Virus record (IMG/VR): IMGVR_UViG_3300036846_000743
Coordinates: 1-64,000 of that record
DNA length: 64,000 nucleotides
Reading direction: 5' to 3' (one strand)
Shown here: one piece after another, positions 10,715-50,194 of the stretch
Layout: every line of letters starts with the position of its first letter
Numbering within the stretch: the first letter of the stretch is position 1
Notes under the pieces: generated by a model
Told to the model about the DNA's origin: nothing
The model's database searches: none
What the model saw: the letters and a program-made list of their open reading frames with translations, nothing else
Translations under genes and position numbers: made by a program

Positions 10715-11818
10715 TCAGGTTCGTTTATCGCGGAAACAGCCGTAGCGGGCAACAAGCCGCCGGCCTTCGCGGATACTCAAATAGGCGAGAGCATCCTCGA
10801 CCGGCACCCGCGGGTTGATGAGCCCATCGGGATAACGCAGCGCCCTGGCCACGGCAGACACCACCACGCGACGTTTGGGCCTGGGTATGACGACATGGAG
10901 CAAGGGCTTATTGCTCCGTGCCAGCTCGTGCACCTTCTTGGGCACGTTGGCACCGTCGACGGCCAAGATCACCTGATGGACCTGGACCTCCCAGGGATAA
11001 GCATGATCATCGACGCAGCGGAAGTGAATCACTTCGAGCATGCCGCCGCCTGGCCCGGCAGCCTTCAAGAGCGCCTTGGACTCGCTCAGCCGATGAAGCC
11101 GGGCATCGGGCGCGCCACGGACGCGGCTATCCAGGAACGTGCTCAGGCCACAGCGCTGGATCGTGCCGCTGATCAACTGCCCGCTCTTGTCTCCCGTGAT
11201 CCGGACATTCCTCACAGGCTTTGGCACAGATCGCGGCAACCGGAAGGTGAAGATCCGCCGGACCAGGTCGTAAGGACTCTTGCTGCCGACTTCGACGTCC
11301 TTTATACTCCGTATAAAGGACGCCGACTTCTCAGGTTTCGGGCCAGTATCGACCGGCCGGACCCGCCGTTTTACCCCTGGTGGTGACGGAAAGAAGCGCG
11401 AGTCGATCTTCAACCAGTATTGCCTGACGTCGCGCGCCCAGCAGAACGGACAGATCTGCCTGAGCTTGCAAGGTCTACGACCTTCCTTCTTGTCGAAGGT
11501 CATGACAAAAGCCACCGGACAGGACATGGCGTTGGGCAATCGCGACTTCTTGCCAGGCAGGTTGAATGGCTTCCAGCCCGCCTCAGCCAGCTGGACGACC
11601 CTGCGACGCCACAGATGCAGTATCCAGGCCGTGGCATCTGAGATATCAGCGTCGCTCCTGAGCCGGCCGAAGGTGGGCCGCAGAACCGCGGAGAGCTGAA
11701 CCTGGTCTTGGTACCGCAACGGTACCGCCGAGACCCTGTAACCGGGATTGGGCGGCCTCTTGCGAAACCTGGAACCGTCCGATGGAGACGCCTCGACGTC
11801 TAGGAGCTTGTCTGACAT
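10715..11818 (-). CDS. Rep_1-like (pC194/pUB110-type HUH) protein with degenerate motifs
   Basis: In order: MSC-x16-CKLRQICPFCWAR Cys cluster; IFTFR (motif I-like); GMLEV...WEVQVHQVIL (motif II, QVH for HUH); ALRYP (motif III Tyr); RRLVARYGCFR C-terminal box. GGAGG RBS before MSDKLL. Confidence 0.5.
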   Translation of the reverse strand: MSDKLLDVEASPSDGSRFRKRPPNPGYRVSAVPLRYQDQVQLSAVLRPTFGRLRSDADISDATAWILHLWRRRVVQLAEAGWKPFNLPGKKSRLPNAMSCPVAFVMTFDKKEGRRPCKLRQICPFCWARDVRQYWLKIDSRFFPSPPGVKRRVRPVDTGPKPEKSASFIRSIKDVEVGSKSPYDLVRRIFTFRLPRSVPKPVRNVRITGDKSGQLISGTIQRCGLSTFLDSRVRGAPDARLHRLSESKALLKAAGPGGGMLEVIHFRCVDDHAYPWEVQVHQVILAVDGANVPKKVHELARSNKPLLHVVIPRPKRRVVVSAVARALRYPDGLINPRVPVEDALAYLSIREGRRLVARYGCFRDKRT

Positions 11819-12251
11819 GGGACCTCCGTGGGGCCATTTGGGGCAGTTTGCGACAGTTTTCGCCAGATGCATTTGACCACGGAATGAGTGACATACGCTT
11901 GTCGCAATCATTCCAGGCTGCGCAAGTCTTGAAGGGTTCGAGACTTCTGGAGAATTAAACAAGTTGCACCAAGTGTTGCAACTATTGAAGCCTCGGACGC
12001 AAGTACTTGCTGGTATTGGTTTTAGTTAGCCTAAATATGGGAAGAAGACTTGTCAAGTCACTAGCCTATTGTTTTTTGCTAGTGACTACTACGTAGATAA
12101 CTTTTTGTGAGAGGTCGCCGCTTCGCGACCTCCCTCTCACAAAAACGGAAAACTTTTTTGTTCGCTTTTTCGATCCGGTACCCAAGTCCTAGCGCCACCA
12201 TCTCGCGCGCCGATCCGGCGAAGCCCTTGAGTCGCCGTCACGGCACCGAGA

Positions 12252-12290
12252 TGCTACTTCCGAGGTAGCATTGCTACTTCCGAAGTAGCA
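12252..12290. repeat. Tandem pair of 19-bp palindromic units TGCTACTTCCGA(G/A)GTAGCA
   Basis: Two copies at 12252-12270 and 12272-12290, differing at one position. Confidence 0.9.
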
Positions 12291-12968
12291 AACCTGCGGG
12301 ATCTAGCGCTATGTTAAGTCCCACAGGTTTTCGTCCTGAATTCCCGGGAAGGGGGAAATTCTTTCATCCGGCTTTCCCTATAGGGCCCTGTTTTTGGTTT
12401 TTTGAGACCCTACTCTCTTGTTTAGTGTTCACAGTGAACGCTCGCGTTCACTGACGTGAACGTTCACGTTCATACCAGCCAGCTAACTGTTCGAGGAACA
12501 GTGCGCACATGCCTAAGAGGATCCCCAACTGCTGATCGAGGCTGGTCTTTCATTTGCACCCGTCAGTCTTCCACTTCAGGGCTCGAGCTTTTCACAAAGA
12601 CCGGTTTTTCCCTCGAACTTTTTCATTTCGAAGTCAAAGTCTTTCGTGCGGCTTTCCCAGGAGGTCTGTTATCTAGCTCTAATGTTTAGATCCCCAGCCA
12701 GCCAGCGCTGGTTGGCCGCCAACCAGCGACAACCAGCGACAGCCAGAGCTGGCAGGCCCCTGAAGCGCGCAATCCATTGCCGCGCCAACAGCTTGGCGCG
12801 GCTCCAGTTGCGCCGCCAGCATTGGCGTCTGGCTTCGCTGATCACTTGGAGTAGTGAATGTTGGTTTTTCACTACCTTGACTTTCCGAAAGGGACTTTCC
12901 GTTCAGCAAAGTTCCGCTGGTTCATGAACCGGCGATGAACCAGCGAACCAAGAAACTTCGCTGAACTC

Positions 12969-13011
12969 GAGGGTTGGTTTTCCAACCCTGGGAGGGTTGG
13001 TTTTCCAACCC
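12969..13011. repeat. Tandem pair of 20-bp hairpin units GAGGGTTGGTTTTCCAACCC
   Basis: Identical copies at 12969-12988 and 12992-13011; each folds as GGGTTGG-TTTT-CCAACCC. Confidence 0.9.
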
Positions 13012-13174
13012 ATCTGGCGCAAGTCCGATGCAGATCCTATTTTCGCTCCGATGAAGATCCGATGATCGAGCGGTTGCTAGCCTTAATATTTAGGCACTAC
13101 TAGGCATGTGCGCACCGAAGCGTCCCGATGCGACTGGAGACGTCGCCAGCCGCTCAAATGTAACCAGAATGTGG

Positions 13175-13513
13175 CTATTCCTGGACTCTGCTGGACTTTG
13201 CTGGACCGACAACAGGGCCTTTGCTCATCAGTTCGAGAATGGTGGCCGAGACCTTGGTCTCGTCGAGATAGTCGGCGGGATCACTCCCGGAGAGAGCGCG
13301 CCGGACCTTGGTCTCGATGTCTACCACATCGAGCACGCCGATCGCCACCTCGGCGTGGTACATATCGAGCGCCAGCTCGGCAGCGTCGCTGCGAGAGCCG
13401 GCCTTGACCTTGTAGGTATGAGTGCCCAGGCCGGCCTCCGAGTCCATCTCAGCATCATCGATTGTGCAGCCTTCAGCCAGGGTCACAGTCACTTTCACGT
13501 CATAGGCAGTCAT
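13175..13513 (-). CDS. Hypothetical protein
   Basis: AGGAGG RBS; acidic 112 aa ORF. Confidence 0.6.
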   Translation of the reverse strand: MTAYDVKVTVTLAEGCTIDDAEMDSEAGLGTHTYKVKAGSRSDAAELALDMYHAEVAIGVLDVVDIETKVRRALSGSDPADYLDETKVSATILELMSKGPVVGPAKSSRVQE

Positions 13514-14492: not shown

Positions 14493-15080
14493 TTACCGTA
14501 GATTCAAGGTCCAATAGGCGCCGAGGCCGGCGATACCCATCCAGCGCGCTGTTGGGTCTAACAGCGCTGCTCGATGACCAGCTGAGTTTAGCCACATCGA
14601 GCCGATGTTCGCGAACGAACCATAGGCCGCGTTCTGACGGCGAGCTGGGCCCATCACGAAGTGGCCCATGCCCCGGGCTGCCTGGTGGTTGTTGTTCTCG
14701 GCAGCCCAACTCGAGAGATTCGGGTCGTGACCGACCGCCGACAGGCCATAAGCAGCCCGGGTGGCGTTCAGCCAGCTCAAGAACCCGTAGGGATCAGTCG
14801 ATACCTCCGTGACCGGCTGTGTCGTGGCGACAGGCATGGTCGTGGTGGTAGCAACGGTCGTTGCGGCAAGAACGGCTTGCCCAGCGGCTGGATCAATTGC
14901 CGGCGGCACTTCAACAGTGCGATTGTCGATCCGCCGGAACTTCGTAGTGATCACCCAGCCATTCCCGTTGAGCTTACCGTAGCCTTCCCAGCCAGGTTGG
15001 TTAGTCAGCCGGAACCACTGAGGTTGATCTGACTGCGAACCTTGACCGAGAGCGACCAGAAGAAACAGCGTTGCTAGCAT
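14493..15080 (-). CDS. Secreted CAP (SCP) domain protein
   Basis: Signal peptide MLATLFLLVALGQG, Thr-rich linker, then LSWLNATRAAYGL...WLNSAGHRAALL...GIA CAP signature. Confidence 0.8.
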   Translation of the reverse strand: MLATLFLLVALGQGSQSDQPQWFRLTNQPGWEGYGKLNGNGWVITTKFRRIDNRTVEVPPAIDPAAGQAVLAATTVATTTTMPVATTQPVTEVSTDPYGFLSWLNATRAAYGLSAVGHDPNLSSWAAENNNHQAARGMGHFVMGPARRQNAAYGSFANIGSMWLNSAGHRAALLDPTARWMGIAGLGAYWTLNLR

Positions 15081-15115
15081 CTCATTCTCCGTACAAAAGT
15101 GTCGAAAGTCCTCAG

Positions 15116-15151
15116 AAAACGACGGACGGCCGACTATAGCGGCCGCCCGCT
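15116..15151 (-). terminator. Terminator-like hairpin
   Basis: Minus strand GCGGGCGGCCG-CTATAGT-CGGCCGTCCGT followed by CGTTTT, just after the stop of 15196. Confidence 0.5.
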
Positions 15152-15195
15152 GCGATGGGGAGTCCAATCTGCCCATCAGCATCCACGCATGGTGG

Positions 15196-15720
15196 TCACT
15201 CGAAGTCGCACGCGACATCGCTGGGGAACGCGCAGTCCTTGTCGCAATGCCTGCACCCCAGTCGTTCGTTGTGGCTGCCCTCATCGGCGACGTCATAGCG
15301 GCTCCTGATCATCAACGTGTCCTCCTTCAGGCTGATCAGGTCGCGCATGCTCGAGACATCCTCCACGTAGAAGAAGTTGTCGAGCCCGGTCGTGTGACAG
15401 TACGGACATTCCAGGTCATCTTCCTCGCCGGCTGCACCAGCCAGCGTGATAACCTCAAGCATCTTGTTCTGGCTTTGTTTGGGCTCTAGCCGCAGCAATG
15501 TGTAGTCCAGATCGAACAGCTCCCCGTCGAACTCGAGGGTGTATCGCGGCTTGCCGTGAGCGATATAGACCTGGACGATCTCGCCGGTCTTGCCCTGGCA
15601 TAACTTGAGACAAGCCCTGGGCACAGGTTCCAGGATCATTTCGAGATCCTTGCCGGCGTAGAGTTGCACCTTTCGGCCCAGCAACCTGGTATGCAGCTGG
15701 GCTCCTGTATCACTCGCCAT
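15196..15720 (-). CDS. Hypothetical protein with a C-terminal zinc ribbon
   Basis: CPYC...CRHC pairs; GGAGG RBS. Confidence 0.55.
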   Translation of the reverse strand: MASDTGAQLHTRLLGRKVQLYAGKDLEMILEPVPRACLKLCQGKTGEIVQVYIAHGKPRYTLEFDGELFDLDYTLLRLEPKQSQNKMLEVITLAGAAGEEDDLECPYCHTTGLDNFFYVEDVSSMRDLISLKEDTLMIRSRYDVADEGSHNERLGCRHCDKDCAFPSDVACDFE

Positions 15721-48451: not shown

Positions 48452-48667
48452 TTACTGGTCAACCTTTTCCAGCAGAACCGCGAGCCAACCAGCGGTGACT
48501 TCAATCGACCTCGAATGGGAGTTAGTAGAATGAGCAACACCAGTGGATCCAACGGATGTCATGGACCTAACGATCCAACCTTGTTTGAGTAACTCGGTGA
48601 GATGTTCCTTAACATCTAGCTCGTTGGGTTTCTGCGTAGTAAGCCCGATCGTGATCAGTTTCTGCAC
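48452..48667 (-). CDS. DUF4177-like small protein
   Basis: LTELLKQGWIV...WLAVLLEK; GGAG RBS. Confidence 0.5.
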   Translation of the reverse strand: MQKLITIGLTTQKPNELDVKEHLTELLKQGWIVRSMTSVGSTGVAHSTNSHSRSIEVTAGWLAVLLEKVDQ

Positions 48668-48763
48668 TTCAACATTTCTCCAATGGCCGAACGATAAAGC
48701 TCACTTGTTCGGCCGGCACAAGTGAGCTGTCTAGGACATAGGGTGAGATATAAGAAAAAGGGT

Positions 48764-48795
48764 AAAGACGGCGGCCGTAGTACGCGGCCGCCGTC
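48764..48795 (-). terminator. Hairpin of the AAAGACGGCG family (copy 1)
   Basis: Minus strand GACGGCGGCCGC-GTACTA-CGGCCGCCGTC-TTT. Confidence 0.6.
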
Positions 48796-48811
48796 GTGCA
48801 AACAAGTTAGA

Positions 48812-49141
48812 TCACTTCTTAACGGGTGGTGCCGGAGCAGTCTTGGTTGTCGCTTCAGCCGGAGCCGGAGTGGCAGCCGGAGCAGCGGGCGGAGCAGGAG
48901 CAGCCGGAGCGGCAGTCAACGCAGGAGCGGCCACCTCGTCCACGATGGCGCGGACGATCACAGGCTTGTCATTGGTCGTGATCCTCACGACCTTCCTGCT
49001 GGTATTGGCCGGCACCTTGACCTCCGTCACTGTCGTATTTGTGCCTTCCGGAAAAAGATCCGGATCTCCGGTGCAGCCAACGGCGCCGAGGGTGGCAAAG
49101 ATCAGGGAAACGCACGCAAACCGACTCATGAACTTACGCAT
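48812..49141 (-). CDS. Putative lipoprotein with an Ala/Pro-rich tail
   Basis: MRKFMSRFACVSLIFATLGAVG-C lipobox; AGGAG RBS. Confidence 0.7.
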   Translation of the reverse strand: MRKFMSRFACVSLIFATLGAVGCTGDPDLFPEGTNTTVTEVKVPANTSRKVVRITTNDKPVIVRAIVDEVAAPALTAAPAAPAPPAAPAATPAPAEATTKTAPAPPVKK

Positions 49142-49257
49142 CGAAACTCCTAACGTAGTTGTGGTGGTGAAGCTGCTAACAAGCAGAAGAACCGAAGTTG
49201 GGGAAGTAGGAACGGCGGCTGCAACATGCAGTCGCCAACACTGAGATACACGACGGG

Positions 49258-49587
49258 TCAGCCTCCGGAGTCCGGCGCTGCTTTGTACGCGAGTGCAACT
49301 ATCACCAGGATGATCAACCAACCGAGCCCGTACAGGGCACCGATGAGGATCAGCCCGGAAACCATCAACAGGATGGTGTTTATCAACTTGCTGCGGAGTA
49401 CCCACCGGACCAGTACCATGACTGTCCTGCGCCAGAGCCATGTGGCGCACAGCCAGCGGAAAAAGATCCAGATACTCGCGATGGACGGTGAGAGGGTTAC
49501 GCTTTTACCCCCGACGACGACCACAGGATTGGCTAGAACAGCTGAGACATGAGCGTTGAAGCTGTTTACCTTCCTGTCTTCTTCCAT
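49258..49587 (-). CDS. Membrane protein
   Basis: Probable start MEEDRK; C-terminal hydrophobic helices. Confidence 0.55.
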   Translation of the reverse strand: MEEDRKVNSFNAHVSAVLANPVVVVGGKSVTLSPSIASIWIFFRWLCATWLWRRTVMVLVRWVLRSKLINTILLMVSGLILIGALYGLGWLIILVIVALAYKAAPDSGG

Positions 49588-49610
49588 GGCTTCTTTCGTA
49601 TCGCTGGAAA

Positions 49611-49644
49611 TGAAAGACGGCGACCACAACGAGCGATCGCCGAC
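49611..49644 (-). terminator. Hairpin of the AAAGACGGCG family (copy 2)
   Basis: TGAAAGACGGCGACCACAACGAGCGATCGCCGAC, near-identical to 50227-50260. Confidence 0.6.
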
Positions 49645-49675
49645 ATGATGGTTAGCTGAAGTCCGCACGGTCGGA

Positions 49676-50194
49676 TCAACTCGACCGTGATACGGTAACT
49701 CCATTGATCGTCGCCTCACTGGCAGTCAGCTTCGTGATCGGCGCATTATCGAACACGGTCACGGAATGGGACTTCCAGCAGACAATTGCCCAGACACGCG
49801 TTACATGGGCTGTCAGCTTACCGTCACGGACGCTCCACACGCCCTTGGCGTTACGCGTCGTGAACGTGCCGTCGCGTTTGAGGTCGACGTCGACCATCTT
49901 CCCGTTGACGCACAAGGCGTAGTGACCGGCGCAGTTTTCACTCGTGACCGGCAGCGGGCTGCTCGGAACAACCGTGACTGACAGCTGGCCGCCCGGAACA
50001 ACTTGCATGTTCGCGGAGGAATACGTGCCGCCGATGCGCACGTTGCCGCCTCCAGACGGGAGAGGCCAAGGTTGTTTGATCTCTCCCCCGGCACCGCTAT
50101 CAATCGTGAATTTGCAGCCTGTGGTGGTAGTGAGACCGGCAATCACGCAAGCCAACAAGACGAAGCGCATGAACCGGCCAGTGATCTTTCTCAT
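49676..50194 (-). CDS. Putative lipoprotein, beta-rich
   Basis: MRKITGRFMRFVLLACVIAGLTTTTG-C lipobox. Confidence 0.7.
   Translation of the reverse strand: MRKITGRFMRFVLLACVIAGLTTTTGCKFTIDSGAGGEIKQPWPLPSGGGNVRIGGTYSSANMQVVPGGQLSVTVVPSSPLPVTSENCAGHYALCVNGKMVDVDLKRDGTFTTRNAKGVWSVRDGKLTAHVTRVWAIVCWKSHSVTVFDNAPITKLTASEATINGVTVSRSS

What the first reader, a model, noticed from the sequence alone, without database searches (positions are those of the whole stretch)
11963..13170. Dense array of at least ten hairpins plus iteron-like octamers in a long non-coding region
Seen: stems at 12056-12086, 12432-12453 (perfect 10 bp), 12454-12469 (perfect 16-bp palindrome), 12851-12875 and 12901-12966 (nested), among others. 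AACCAGCG occurs five times in mixed orientation (12706, 12721, 12731, 12915, 12938), and T-rich tracts are present. The flanking genes are both on the minus strand, so this is not a divergent promoter gap. Inference: replication origin, packaging (pac) site or large structured ncRNA.
Basis: partly seen in the sequence, partly recalled or inferred. Interest (0 to 1): 0.6.

Follow-up and report, generated by a model that had tools for sequence, protein, structure and literature searches.

The report
Origin-like hairpin region of jumbo phage
The longest non-coding stretch of a 226-kb soil jumbo phage holds more DNA hairpins and paired palindromes than any other part of the genome, its core is conserved upstream of a distant relative of rolling-circle replication initiators, and it is most likely that gene's control region and a replication origin, though this is unproven.

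Summary
The true gap is 11819-13174 (1356 nt, GC 0.52 against 0.61). No ORF in it scores as coding. It has 23 perfect hairpins of at least 7 bp, against 1.3 in shuffles, and holds 8 of the genome's 78 hairpins of at least 9 bp. The folding z-score is -12 on both strands. The window is the first 64 kb of a complete 226-kb metagenomic phage. Every palindrome type in the gap occurs only here in the genome. Eight related phage loci carry a shorter gap (320-880 nt by my estimate) upstream of the same 367-aa gene. They share a covarying ~45-nt hairpin (H1), two further hairpins, a sigma70-like promoter and ACCAGCGCTGG-type palindromes. The gene has no Pfam or PHROG family. Its predicted fold, its language-model neighbours and a weak but colinear profile alignment all point to Rep_1 (pC194-type) initiators. 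The 4-Cys motif and a tyrosine are kept; the HUH histidines and the catalytic glutamates are not. Best reading (0.45): an origin plus promoter/operator region of a Rep-like initiator. Rivals: purely transcriptional control, structured RNA, a rolling-circle transposon relic, or a pac site. No RNA or raw-read data exist to decide.

The parts
11819..13174 (.). Whole non-coding gap, 1356 nt, GC 0.52. It is the densest hairpin and palindrome cluster in the 226-kb genome.
10715..11818 (-). 367-aa gene directly downstream of the gap. It is a Zn-binding (4-Cys), Rep_1-like protein with no Pfam or PHROG family. Y329 is nearly invariant and the HUH motif is replaced.
12102..12145 (-). Hairpin H1: a T5 run, a purine-rich arm, the invariant apical stem GTCGC/GCGAC with loop GNAGCG, a pyrimidine-rich arm and an A5 run. 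There is one copy per genome, 298-445 nt upstream of the gene, in all 9 loci. The lower stem covaries.
12086..12096 (-). H2: a small hairpin or palindrome (CTAC-GTA-GTAG). Its sequence varies between relatives, where GTTAC direct repeats flank it.
12056..12087 (-). H3: a 10-bp stem with an A-rich 12-nt loop, covarying among relatives. It abuts the -35-like hexamer.
12028..12056 (-). Sigma70-like promoter pointing at the gene: TTGACA (12056-12051), a 17-nt spacer holding the conserved CTTCCCAT (12044-12037), then TAGGCT (12033-12028). L009 has TTGACA-17-TATACT. The CTTGA word is also a possible nick-site-like motif. The genome's lowest-GC 100-nt window begins at 12014.
   Evidence: read directly from the sequence
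11962..11987 (.). GTTGCAAC / GTGCAAC repeats in the 5' leader. They are conserved in L010, L012, L015 and L067 and occur nowhere else in the genome.
12252..12291 (.). Two tandem 19-bp palindromes of TGCTACTTC-N-GAAGTAGCA type, 20 bp apart. Unique in the genome.
12290..12330 (.). 12-bp stem with a 17-nt loop that holds a TAGCGCTA palindrome.
12356..12378 (+). Copy 1 of a 23-nt module ending in GGCTTTCCC. Relatives carry one copy about 105 nt upstream of the gene, mostly in the opposite orientation. It is followed by TGTTTAG and a palindrome pair.
12432..12472 (.). Two adjacent palindromes sharing GTGAACG/CGTTCAC half-sites, 22 bp apart. Unique in the genome.
12636..12658 (+). Copy 2 of the GGCTTTCCC module. 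A 21-nt stretch is identical to L015.
12697..12738 (.). AACCAGCG cluster I: the CCAGCGCTGG palindrome, an 11+1+11 palindrome and one extra direct copy. The same ACCAGCGCTGG palindromes occur in L012, L013, L014 and L016.
12779..12802 (.). GC-rich 10-bp hairpin with a 4-nt loop.
12851..12875 (.). GTAGTGAA...TTCACTAC hairpin. In L010, L012, L013 and L067 it is the first element after the upstream gene.
12901..12966 (.). Nested inverted repeat: 13-bp outer arms and, inside them, the 11-bp CGCTGGTTCAT/ATGAACCAGCG pair (AACCAGCG cluster II).
12971..13011 (.). Two identical GGGTTGG-TTTT-CCAACCC hairpins, 23 bp apart.
13024..13068 (+). Two 22-nt direct repeats of TCCGATG-N-AGATCC type, 23 bp apart.
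12501..12515 (.). Left arm of a perfect 15-nt inverted repeat; the partner is at 13101-13115. The same word is single-copy in the 5' leader of L012 and L014, which suggests that this window's gap grew by duplication and inversion.
13101..13115 (.). Right arm of the 15-nt inverted repeat.
11296..11322 (-). Perfect 12-bp hairpin with a 3-nt loop inside the Rep-like gene (codons 165-172, a low-confidence loop of the model). It sits at the same codon position in all 9 homologues, and the stems covary.

Best explanation
The gap is the cis-acting control region of a phage replication-initiator-like gene. It combines a replication origin with that gene's promoter and operators. The proposed mechanism follows; every step is inferred, none is shown. 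The 367-aa Zn-finger, Rep_1-like protein binds the genome-specific palindromes, which come in tandem pairs about two helical turns apart. Negative supercoiling and the AT-rich surroundings let the conserved inverted repeats extrude. These repeats are H1, which has T5/A5 runs at its base, and possibly the hairpin inside the gene. Extrusion exposes a single-stranded loop where replication starts, either by a nick as in rolling-circle dso elements or by local melting and loading of the phage's own helicase and family-A polymerase. In single-stranded form H1-H3 could also prime the lagging strand, as an sso does. The same protein sitting on sites that flank the TTGACA-17-TAnnnT promoter would autoregulate its own gene. 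What is shown: the region is non-coding; it is uniquely rich in hairpins; its elements occur nowhere else in the genome; it holds the genome's most AT-rich spot; its proximal ~400 nt are conserved, with covariation and in a fixed orientation, upstream of the same gene in nine phage loci; and that gene resembles Rep_1 in fold and in its Cys motif.
For: Hairpin excess and z = -12. No coding signal. Each palindrome type is confined to the gap, even allowing mismatches. The lowest-GC 100-nt and 200-nt windows of the whole genome start at 12014 and 11907. All 13 homologue contexts examined show a gap of 111-918 nt between called genes upstream of the gene. H1 is present once, in the same orientation, in all 9 loci with DNA. 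For H1 and H3, 94.2% of cells pair against 83.7% in shuffles, 12 of 24 pairs change on both sides, 0 of 500 shuffles reach this, and slid controls fall to 47-56%. L067 has a double compensatory change in the otherwise invariant apical stem. ACCAGCGCTGG palindromes and TTGCAAC repeats are shared among relatives, while other paired palindromes are genome-specific, as replicon-specificity sites would be. Protein evidence: the top three ESM-Atlas structural neighbours are all Rep_1 clusters (TM 0.49-0.51 by the query, 0.56-0.57 by the match; 232-245 residues aligned). Seven of 30 language-model neighbours are Rep_1. The top VIA-align match is the SIRV1 ORF119 Rep, Z 6.2. hhalign of 51 family members against 9 plasmid Rep_1 proteins gives a colinear 193-column alignment, E 0.0024, that puts the 4-Cys motif and the nearly invariant Y329 in register with the Rep_1 Cys motif and catalytic Tyr. 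The phage has its own family-A polymerase and a weak DnaB-like hit, so an origin and an initiator are expected. In rolling-circle plasmids the dso lies upstream of rep or inside it, and the sso is a large, orientation-specific hairpin region (PMC5703833).
Against: No experiment or read data bear on replication. The hhalign probability is only 12%. No HMM (Pfam, PHROGs, PDB) detects the protein. The HUH histidines align to Q-V-(R/H), and the two catalytic Glu residues of the pC194 family align to non-acidic residues, so nicking activity is doubtful. Z 6.2 is tied with generic ferredoxin-like folds. No E. coli-type DnaA box and no RSB sequence occur in the gap. The repeats come in pairs, not in longer iteron arrays. 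Covariation of inverted repeats is also expected for operators bound by co-evolving dimeric proteins. GC skew shows no switch at this position. Most of the distal 950 nt is specific to this window.
Confidence: 0.45

Rival explanations
1. A purely transcriptional control region. It marks an operon boundary and holds the promoter of the downstream gene cluster, operator palindromes for one or more phage regulators (tandem dimer sites about 2 helical turns apart), and RNA hairpins (H1-H3) that stabilise or process the upstream transcript. It has no role in replication.
For: The -35 hexamer (TTGACA or TTGCGA) is conserved, and a TAnnnT/A hexamer sits 17-18 nt downstream in 6 of 9 loci; L009 has TTGACA-17-TATACT. 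An A-rich H3 loop lies where an UP element would be. Short-loop palindromes in pairs spaced 20-23 bp are typical operators. An Ant/Bro-N anti-repressor-like gene lies in the downstream cluster. The phage encodes its own sigma-like factor. In H1, two relatives have G-U pairs only on the gene strand.
Against: The consensus scan finds no sigma70-type promoter in this window's gap. None of the palindromes recurs at any other intergenic region of the genome, which is unusual for regulators. H1 has a T-run 5' and an A-run 3' of the stem, so it is not an intrinsic terminator on either strand. This reading does not explain the conserved link with a Rep-like gene or the hairpin inside that gene. It is compatible with the origin reading, since many origins overlap the promoter of their rep gene.
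Confidence: 0.28
2. One or several structured non-coding RNAs, for example an antisense or counter-transcript RNA that controls the downstream gene, or a phage regulatory or anti-defence RNA, are transcribed from the gap.
For: Folding is strong (z about -12). H1 and H3 covary. The loop (GNAGCG) and the purine bulge are conserved and asymmetric, which argues for a function in a single-stranded form. Two promoter-like GGCTTTCCC modules point along the + strand, antisense to the flanking genes.
Against: No Rfam family matches, even at E <= 1. The energy is equal on both strands, and G-U counts do not pick a strand. Most elements are perfect palindromes with loops of 1-4 nt. No terminator follows the hairpins (sequence). 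No RNA data set holds the locus.
Confidence: 0.12
3. A relic of a rolling-circle mobile element (IS91- or Helitron-like). The Rep_1-like gene would be its transposase, and the hairpins its ori and ter ends, now domesticated or decaying inside the phage.
For: One of the nearest structural clusters combines Rep_1 with Zn_Tnp_IS91. The protein family is large (612 representative clusters) and is found on contigs with unrelated neighbourhoods. This window's gap contains a 15-nt perfect inverted repeat and shuffled, duplicated modules.
Against: The gene and H1 keep the same position, with flanking Bro-N and ribonucleotide-reductase synteny, across phages that differ by 40-55% in protein sequence. 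There is one copy per genome. The hairpins lie on one side of the gene only. No Y2 or HUH motifs are present.
Confidence: 0.08
4. A packaging initiation (pac or cos) site recognised by the terminase.
For: It is a unique, structured, repeat-bearing non-coding site. A gpA-type large terminase is encoded in the window.
Against: The terminase gene is 14 kb away and on the other strand. The site is tied to a different conserved gene. The contigs of the relatives begin at different places, and this contig closes on itself with an overlap of about 129 nt, so no fixed end is seen here. No raw reads exist to test termini.
Confidence: 0.05

Closest known systems
Double-strand and single-strand origins (dso, sso) of rolling-circle plasmids with a Rep_1 initiator (pC194/pUB110 family)
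   Same: A non-coding, hairpin-rich, AT-rich region lies directly upstream of a gene of the same size (about 320-370 aa) with the same 4-Cys motif (C...C-x4/5-CPxC-W/R) and an aligned tyrosine. There are paired initiator-type binding sites next to the gene's promoter. There is an orientation-fixed large hairpin whose loop contains AGCG, as in the CS-6 motif TAGCG(T/A). A CTTGA word sits at the start of the conserved block; the pC194 origin core has CTTGATA (PMC7072734; PMC5703833, PMC6395029).
   Different: The replicon is 226 kb, not 2-10 kb, and has its own polymerase. The HUH histidines and both catalytic Glu residues are not conserved. No HMM-level similarity exists. No RSB is present. The nick-site consensus is not matched beyond 5 nt. 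H1 is a near-perfect ~20-bp stem, whereas an sso is a ~160-nt imperfect structure.
Intergenic region of filamentous (Ff) phages
   Same: It is a single long non-coding region with a row of distinct hairpins that serve origin functions for a Rep-type nickase and overlap transcription signals. This rests on my own knowledge and was not tested here.
   Different: That is an ssDNA phage of 6.4 kb. One of its hairpins is a packaging signal. There is no sequence or protein-family similarity.
pT181-family origin inside the rep gene; the phiX174 and P2 gene A origins
   Same: A conserved cruciform-capable palindrome lies inside the initiator's own coding sequence (PMC5703833, for pT181; phiX174 and P2 from my own knowledge). 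Here a perfect 11-16 bp hairpin sits at the same codon position in all 9 homologues.
   Different: The loop here is only 3 nt. The initiator family differs (Rep_trans against Rep_1-like). No nick site is known.
Iteron-type theta origins (lambda ori, P1 oriR, Rep_3 plasmids)
   Same: Repeated initiator-type sites about two helical turns apart lie next to an AT-rich segment and next to the initiator gene. The lambda iterons are themselves palindromic (my own knowledge).
   Different: Here each site type has two copies, not four or more. No DnaA box is present. The neighbouring protein shows no similarity to Rep_3 or lambda O-type initiators.
Phage immunity and operator regions (for example lambda OR/OL)
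   Same: Tandem palindromic sites are spaced 20-23 bp apart beside a promoter, and an anti-repressor-like gene lies downstream.
   Different: At least five unrelated palindrome families sit in one gap. No repressor gene was identified nearby, and none of the sites recurs elsewhere in the genome.

Membership tests
Rep_1 (PF01446, pC194-type rolling-circle initiator), tested on the neighbouring 367-aa protein | A match to the family HMM above the gathering score | tested here: not met
   No Pfam hit for the protein, for 19 close relatives at E <= 10, or for 51 distant relatives at E <= 0.01. pC194 RepA itself scores 198.7 bits.
Rep_1 (PF01446) | Overall fold and domain order | tested here: inconclusive
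   The top 3 ESM-Atlas structural rows are all Rep_1 clusters: TM 0.49-0.51 by the query and 0.56-0.57 by the match, with 232-245 residues aligned over residues 29-367. VIA-align puts the SIRV1 Rep first at Z 6.2, but tied with generic ferredoxin-like folds. Foldseek against the PDB finds nothing. hhalign of A3 against A4 is colinear over 193 columns, at E 0.0024 and probability 12%.
Rep_1 (PF01446) | N-terminal Cys cluster: C...C-x4-CPxC-x-W-R | tested here: met
   C100, C117, C123, P124, C126 and R129 are invariant in 51 family members. They align with C42, C65, C70, P71, C73 and R76, which are invariant in the 9 plasmid Rep_1 proteins.
Rep_1 / HUH superfamily | HUH metal-binding motif (HPHxHVLL) | tested here: not met
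   It aligns to W-x-V-Q-V-(R/H)-Q-L-I-L. The two His positions are Q and R/H.
Rep_1 (pC194 family) | Catalytic Tyr214 with Glu210 and Glu142 (PMC5703833) | tested here: inconclusive
   The nearly invariant Y329, preceded by R, aligns with the K-Y of motif 3. The equivalents of Glu210 and Glu142 align to R and T.
Rolling-circle dso | Initiator binding repeats plus a palindrome carrying the nick site, upstream of or inside rep | tested here: inconclusive
   The layout fits: palindromes, paired sites, and hairpins both upstream of and inside the gene. No nick-site consensus beyond CTTGA is present, and there are no biochemical data.
ssoA-type single-strand origin | RSB sequence, and CS-6 (TAGCGT/A) in the terminal loop of a large imperfect hairpin | tested here: not met
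   RSB is absent at up to 3 mismatches. The H1 loop is GNAGCG and shares only AGCG with CS-6; one relative has GTAGCG.
DnaA-dependent, iteron-type theta origin | DnaA boxes, at least 3-4 direct iterons, and an AT-rich unwinding element | tested here: not met
   No TTATCCACA at up to 1 mismatch occurs in the gap. The repeats are palindromic pairs. The AT-rich element is present. The host is unknown, so its DnaA box could differ.
Any described RNA family (Rfam 15) | A covariance-model match | tested here: not met
   There is no match at gathering score in the window. At E <= 1 over 11600-13400 there is one match, to a eukaryotic lncRNA model at E 0.5 and 17.3 bits against a gathering score of 45, which I take as chance.
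Intrinsic terminator | A GC-rich stem followed by a 3' U-tract | tested here: not met
   H1 has T5 on the 5' side and A5 on the 3' side on both strands. The scan lists only weak 5-7 bp candidates: 7 found, against 2.7 +/- 1.6 expected.
pac or cos site | Physical DNA ends at the site, usually beside the terminase genes | not testable with these tools
   Only Logan contigs of one soil DNA run hold the locus. The terminase gene is 14 kb away.

The most novel reading that the evidence does not exclude
A large, unannotated protein family (at least 612 clusters at 50% identity) descends from Rep_1 rolling-circle initiators, has lost the HUH metal site, and keeps the Zn cluster and a tyrosine. In ~226-231-kb soil jumbo phages it acts as the replication initiator at a conserved cruciform origin: H1 upstream of the gene, plus a palindrome inside the gene kept by selection on DNA structure at the cost of the protein sequence. 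That would be a new initiator-origin system for giant phages.
Probability: 0.22. Interest if true: 0.75.

Novelty: new variant of a known kind. Interest (0 to 1): 0.55.

Why it matters
To my knowledge (the one literature search on this found nothing relevant), origins of replication and initiators are mostly undefined for jumbo phages. This locus offers a concrete, testable pair: a unique cis region and an adjacent conserved gene. The gene belongs to a widespread metagenomic family with no annotation. If the protein binds or nicks these hairpins, that would define the family's function. It would also extend rolling-circle-type initiators to genomes of about 230 kb and give a replicon module for engineering such phages. 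If the region is only regulatory, it is still an unusually dense and well-conserved control hub, with an example of a coding sequence constrained by a nucleic-acid hairpin.

Tried and rejected
- **Coding sequence in the gap:** rejected, from negative codon-usage scores and no tblastx remnant.
- **tRNA, tmRNA or a known RNA family:** none found.
- **DNA similarity of the gap to GenBank phages:** none. tblastn of the 367-aa protein against the same phages: none.
- **Exact-pattern scans for the hairpins:** the GGGTTGG hairpin gave five unrelated viral contigs. The AACCAGCG palindrome and the H1 core gave none in viral contigs. The 19-nt H1 core in metagenome contigs gave 50 hits, all chance matches without the hairpin arms.
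- **The Rep-like protein in reference prokaryote genomes:** no relative found. A second viral-contig scan only recovered the L009 phage again.
- **Names for family members:** all are "hypothetical protein".
- **Dispersed promoter or operator idea:** rejected, because no palindrome type and no GGCTTTCCC module recurs elsewhere in the genome.
- **Partition site (parS) idea:** weakened, because no ParB_N domain is found in the genome.
- **AEP primase idea for the protein:** only a 17-residue Zn-motif match at E about 1.2, and no conserved acidic triad.
- **GC skew:** not informative.
- **Other "gaps" from my crude gene caller:** mostly contain long ORFs, and none approaches this hairpin density.
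- **Reads and codes:** Read laying was not used, because the only run is kept as contigs and cannot show ends or expression. No genetic code other than table 11 was used.
Full report
**Setting.** The window is bases 1-64000 of a 226,073-bp IMG/VR virus record that CheckV rates 100% complete. Its ends overlap by about 129 nt, so the assembly closes on itself. Genome GC is about 0.61. It encodes a class II ribonucleotide reductase, a sigma70-like factor, a gpA-type large terminase and a Bro-N/Ant-like protein in the window. At 209.7-213.4 kb it has a family-A DNA polymerase, and near 215 kb a weak DnaB-like hit. The only public run that holds the locus is one soil metagenome kept as contigs. No GenBank phage resembles it in DNA.

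**Observation.** The left flanking gene starts at ATG 11818 behind a GGAGG site. Its homologues align from there, so the gap is 11819-13174, or 1356 nt.
- A codon-usage model trained on the phage's long ORFs scores every ORF of at least 40 aa in the gap negative, and scores both neighbours positive on the minus strand. tblastx against the relatives and against the rest of the genome finds no coding remnant.
- The gap has 23, 13 and 8 perfect hairpins with stems of at least 7, 8 and 9 bp. Dinucleotide shuffles give 1.3, 0.37 and 0.10.
- It contains 8 of the genome's 78 hairpins of at least 9 bp. No other window of the same size has more than 3. Density is 17 hairpins per kb, against 2.8 per kb in the first 60 kb.
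- The folding energy is 12 standard deviations below shuffles on both strands.
- AACCAGCG occurs five times here, in mixed orientation, at P about 1e-8. TTGGTTTT occurs five times in the genome, all in the gap and all on the + strand.

**Anatomy.** Most elements are palindromes with loops of 1-4 nt, arranged as tandem pairs 20-23 bp apart: the TGCTAC type, the GTGAACG type, the GGGTTGG hairpins and the TCCGATG direct repeats. AACCAGCG sites form two clusters. Allowing mismatches, none of these site types, nor H1, GTTGCAAC or the GGCTTTCCC module, occurs anywhere else in the 226 kb. They are therefore locus-specific cis elements and not dispersed promoters or operators. The lowest-GC 100-nt and 200-nt windows of the whole genome start at 12014 and 11907.

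**Relatives.** The downstream 367-aa gene has 28 homologues at 46-62% identity in metagenomes, several on contigs of 226-231 kb. In all 13 contexts examined a gap precedes the gene. It measures 111-918 nt between called genes. For the eight relatives with DNA I put the true non-coding stretch at 320-880 nt, because some small ORF calls inside it look spurious. Bro-N and ribonucleotide-reductase synteny is kept in several contexts. In the nine loci with DNA, the proximal ~400 nt form a conserved module, read on the gene strand as follows.
- **H1.** A hairpin with a T-run at its 5' base, a purine-rich arm, a 3-4 nt purine bulge, the invariant apical stem GTCGC/GCGAC with loop GNAGCG, a pyrimidine-rich arm and an A-run. 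It lies 298-445 nt upstream of the start codon, always in the same orientation.
- **H2.** A small hairpin of variable sequence, flanked in most relatives by GTTAC direct repeats.
- **H3.** A hairpin with an A-rich loop.
- **Promoter-like block.** TTGACA (or TTGCGA), a spacer holding CTTCCCAT, and a TAnnnT/A hexamer 17-18 nt downstream in six of nine loci. L009 has TTGACA-17-TATACT.
- **Leader.** TTGCAAC repeats.

On the eight-sequence alignment A2, the H1 and H3 helices pair in 94.2% of cells, against 83.7 +/- 1.6% in shuffles. Twelve of 24 pairs change on both sides. No shuffle out of 500 reaches these values, and slid controls fall to 47-56% (RNAalifold). L067 even swaps T-A for A-T in the otherwise invariant apical stem. 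Each sequence folds into the same architecture with similar energy on either strand, so the strand, and whether the structure acts as DNA or RNA, cannot be told. Upstream of H1 the relatives share a GTAGYGAAA hairpin right after the preceding gene.

This window's gap is two to four times longer than the relatives' gaps. The extra sequence consists of copies of words that are single-copy in the relatives' leaders, partly inverted: the GGCTTTCCC module appears twice, and a 15-nt word appears as a perfect inverted repeat 585 nt apart. Window-specific palindrome pairs make up the rest. The gap looks like an expansion of the same control region by duplication and inversion.

**The neighbouring protein.**
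- Nothing in Pfam, PHROGs or PDB sequences detects it or 50 relatives.
- A profile search finds 612 representative clusters at E <= 0.001, so it is a large unannotated family. All source names read "hypothetical protein".
- Invariant across 51 diverse members are C100, C117, C123, P124, C126 and R129. Nearly invariant are W70, W135, G259, W276, R316, Y329, P330 and R350.
- The AlphaFold2 model is confident (pLDDT 78, pTM 0.80).
- Foldseek against the PDB finds nothing. VIA-align ranks the SIRV1 ORF119 Rep first at Z 6.2, tied with generic ferredoxin-like folds.
- In the ESM Atlas the three nearest structural groups are all Rep_1 clusters (TM 0.49-0.51 by the query, 0.56-0.57 by the match; 232-245 aligned residues spanning almost the whole protein). 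Seven of 30 language-model neighbours are Rep_1.
- I built a Rep_1 alignment from pC194 and eight plasmid "protein rep" genes. hhalign against the 51-member family gives one colinear alignment of 193 columns, E 0.0024, probability 12%. It matches the family's Cys cluster to the invariant Rep_1 cluster C...C-x4-CPxC-x-W-R, and matches R-Y329 to the K-Y of the catalytic-tyrosine motif.
- In the same alignment the HUH histidines fall on Q-V-(R/H), and the two catalytic glutamates of the pC194 family (PMC5703833) fall on non-acidic residues.

I read this as probable remote homology to Rep_1, with the classical active site not retained. The protein is not a demonstrable member of the family.

**Interpretation.** In rolling-circle replicons the double-strand origin (initiator binding sites plus a palindrome that extrudes as a cruciform) lies upstream of rep, or inside it in the pT181 family. 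The single-strand origin is a large, orientation-specific hairpin region with a conserved loop motif, CS-6 = TAGCG(T/A) (PMC5703833, PMC6395029). The locus here has the same logic:
- it is a unique, AT-rich, hairpin-dense region fixed in orientation upstream of a Rep_1-like gene;
- it has paired, genome-specific palindromes next to the gene's promoter;
- the H1 loop contains AGCG;
- a CTTGA word begins the conserved block (the pC194 origin core contains CTTGATA; PMC7072734);
- a perfect 11-16 bp hairpin lies inside the gene, at the same codon position in all nine homologues, and its stem covaries while the encoded loop peptide changes.

I therefore favour an origin combined with an autoregulated promoter, at confidence 0.45. 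The steps from binding to extrusion to nicking or melting are inferred, not shown. Arguments against:
- the similarity to Rep_1 is weak and the catalytic residues are missing;
- there is no RSB, no E. coli-type DnaA box and no skew signal;
- inverted repeats bound by co-evolving dimeric proteins also covary.

**Rivals.**
- A purely transcriptional hub (0.28) explains the promoter and the operator-like pairs. It does not explain why the sites occur nowhere else in the genome, the link to the Rep-like gene, or the in-gene hairpin. It can also coexist with an origin.
- Structured RNA (0.12) is not excluded for H1-H3. It lacks any Rfam match, strand asymmetry, terminators or RNA data.
- A relic of an IS91-like rolling-circle transposon (0.08) fits the nearest structural neighbours. 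It does not fit the stable synteny or the single copy per genome.
- A pac site (0.05) is unlikely given the distance from the terminase gene, and cannot be tested without raw reads.

**Novelty and score.** A literature search found no paper linking jumbo phages with HUH or Rep-type origins. If the reading is right, this is a new variant of a known kind: an initiator-plus-origin module of rolling-circle ancestry in a 226-kb phage, with an unannotated, HUH-less Rep_1-like family. Interest is 0.55. The structure is real, conserved and testable, but its function rests on inference.

Noticed in passing
window 11296-11322 (inside gene 10715-11818, minus strand); L009 6402-6426, L010 6511-6545, L012 6516-6540 and the same codon position in L013-L016 and L067: A perfect 11-16 bp hairpin with a 3-nt loop sits inside the Rep-like coding sequence in all nine homologues. 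The stems covary while the encoded peptide, a low-confidence loop of the model, changes (for example SFIRSIKD against SIASTRSVEAIE). Selection therefore acts on the nucleic-acid structure. It could be an origin or nick site inside the gene, or a regulatory RNA hairpin.
   Followed up: partly
window 12501-12515 and 13101-13115: A perfect 15-nt inverted repeat lies 585 nt apart. The same word, 19 nt identical, is single-copy in the 5' leader of L012 and L014. Together with two inverted copies of the GGCTTTCCC module, this suggests that the window's gap grew by duplication and inversion and might be invertible.
   Followed up: partly
window about 48500-49700: This is a second zone with weak coding scores at a strand switch. 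It has 9 hairpins of at least 7 bp (5.6 per kb), including 48698-48728 and 48767-48795. It may be another regulatory region.
   Followed up: no
L012 9636-9662: A hairpin with the same apex as the in-gene hairpin (TATAC-GTA-GTATA), on a different lower stem, lies between two genes 3.6 kb downstream in a relative. The apex may be a recognition motif used more than once.
   Followed up: no
L003 5590-5605 and 6719-6736 (IMG/VR contig of 185 kb, a 36%-identical homologue): A distant homologue of the Rep-like gene is flanked on both sides by a TAATTAGCGCTAATTA-type palindrome. Upstream of it lies a 200-nt AT-rich stretch with three hairpins, one with AACCAGT/ACTGGTT arms, and direct repeats. AGCGCT-centred palindromes may be a family-wide site.
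   Followed up: partly
window 14493-15296 (minus strand): A 267-aa ORF has a weak CAP (cysteine-rich secretory protein) domain match, E 8e-6. Weak CAP-domain hits also occur on genes upstream of the Rep-like gene in L010 and L016.
   Followed up: no
whole genome, 56-102 kb against the rest: GC skew on the + strand is positive over roughly 56-102 kb and negative elsewhere, although nearly all genes are on the minus strand throughout. Gene orientation does not explain this.
   Followed up: no
L019, L026, L027, L030, L049 (unrelated metagenome contigs): The 19-nt H1 core word also occurs in unrelated soil contigs. In L049 (fully) and L026 (in part) it recurs a few tens of nt downstream as an inverted copy. 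These may be a repeat family of their own and are not related to this locus.
   Followed up: no
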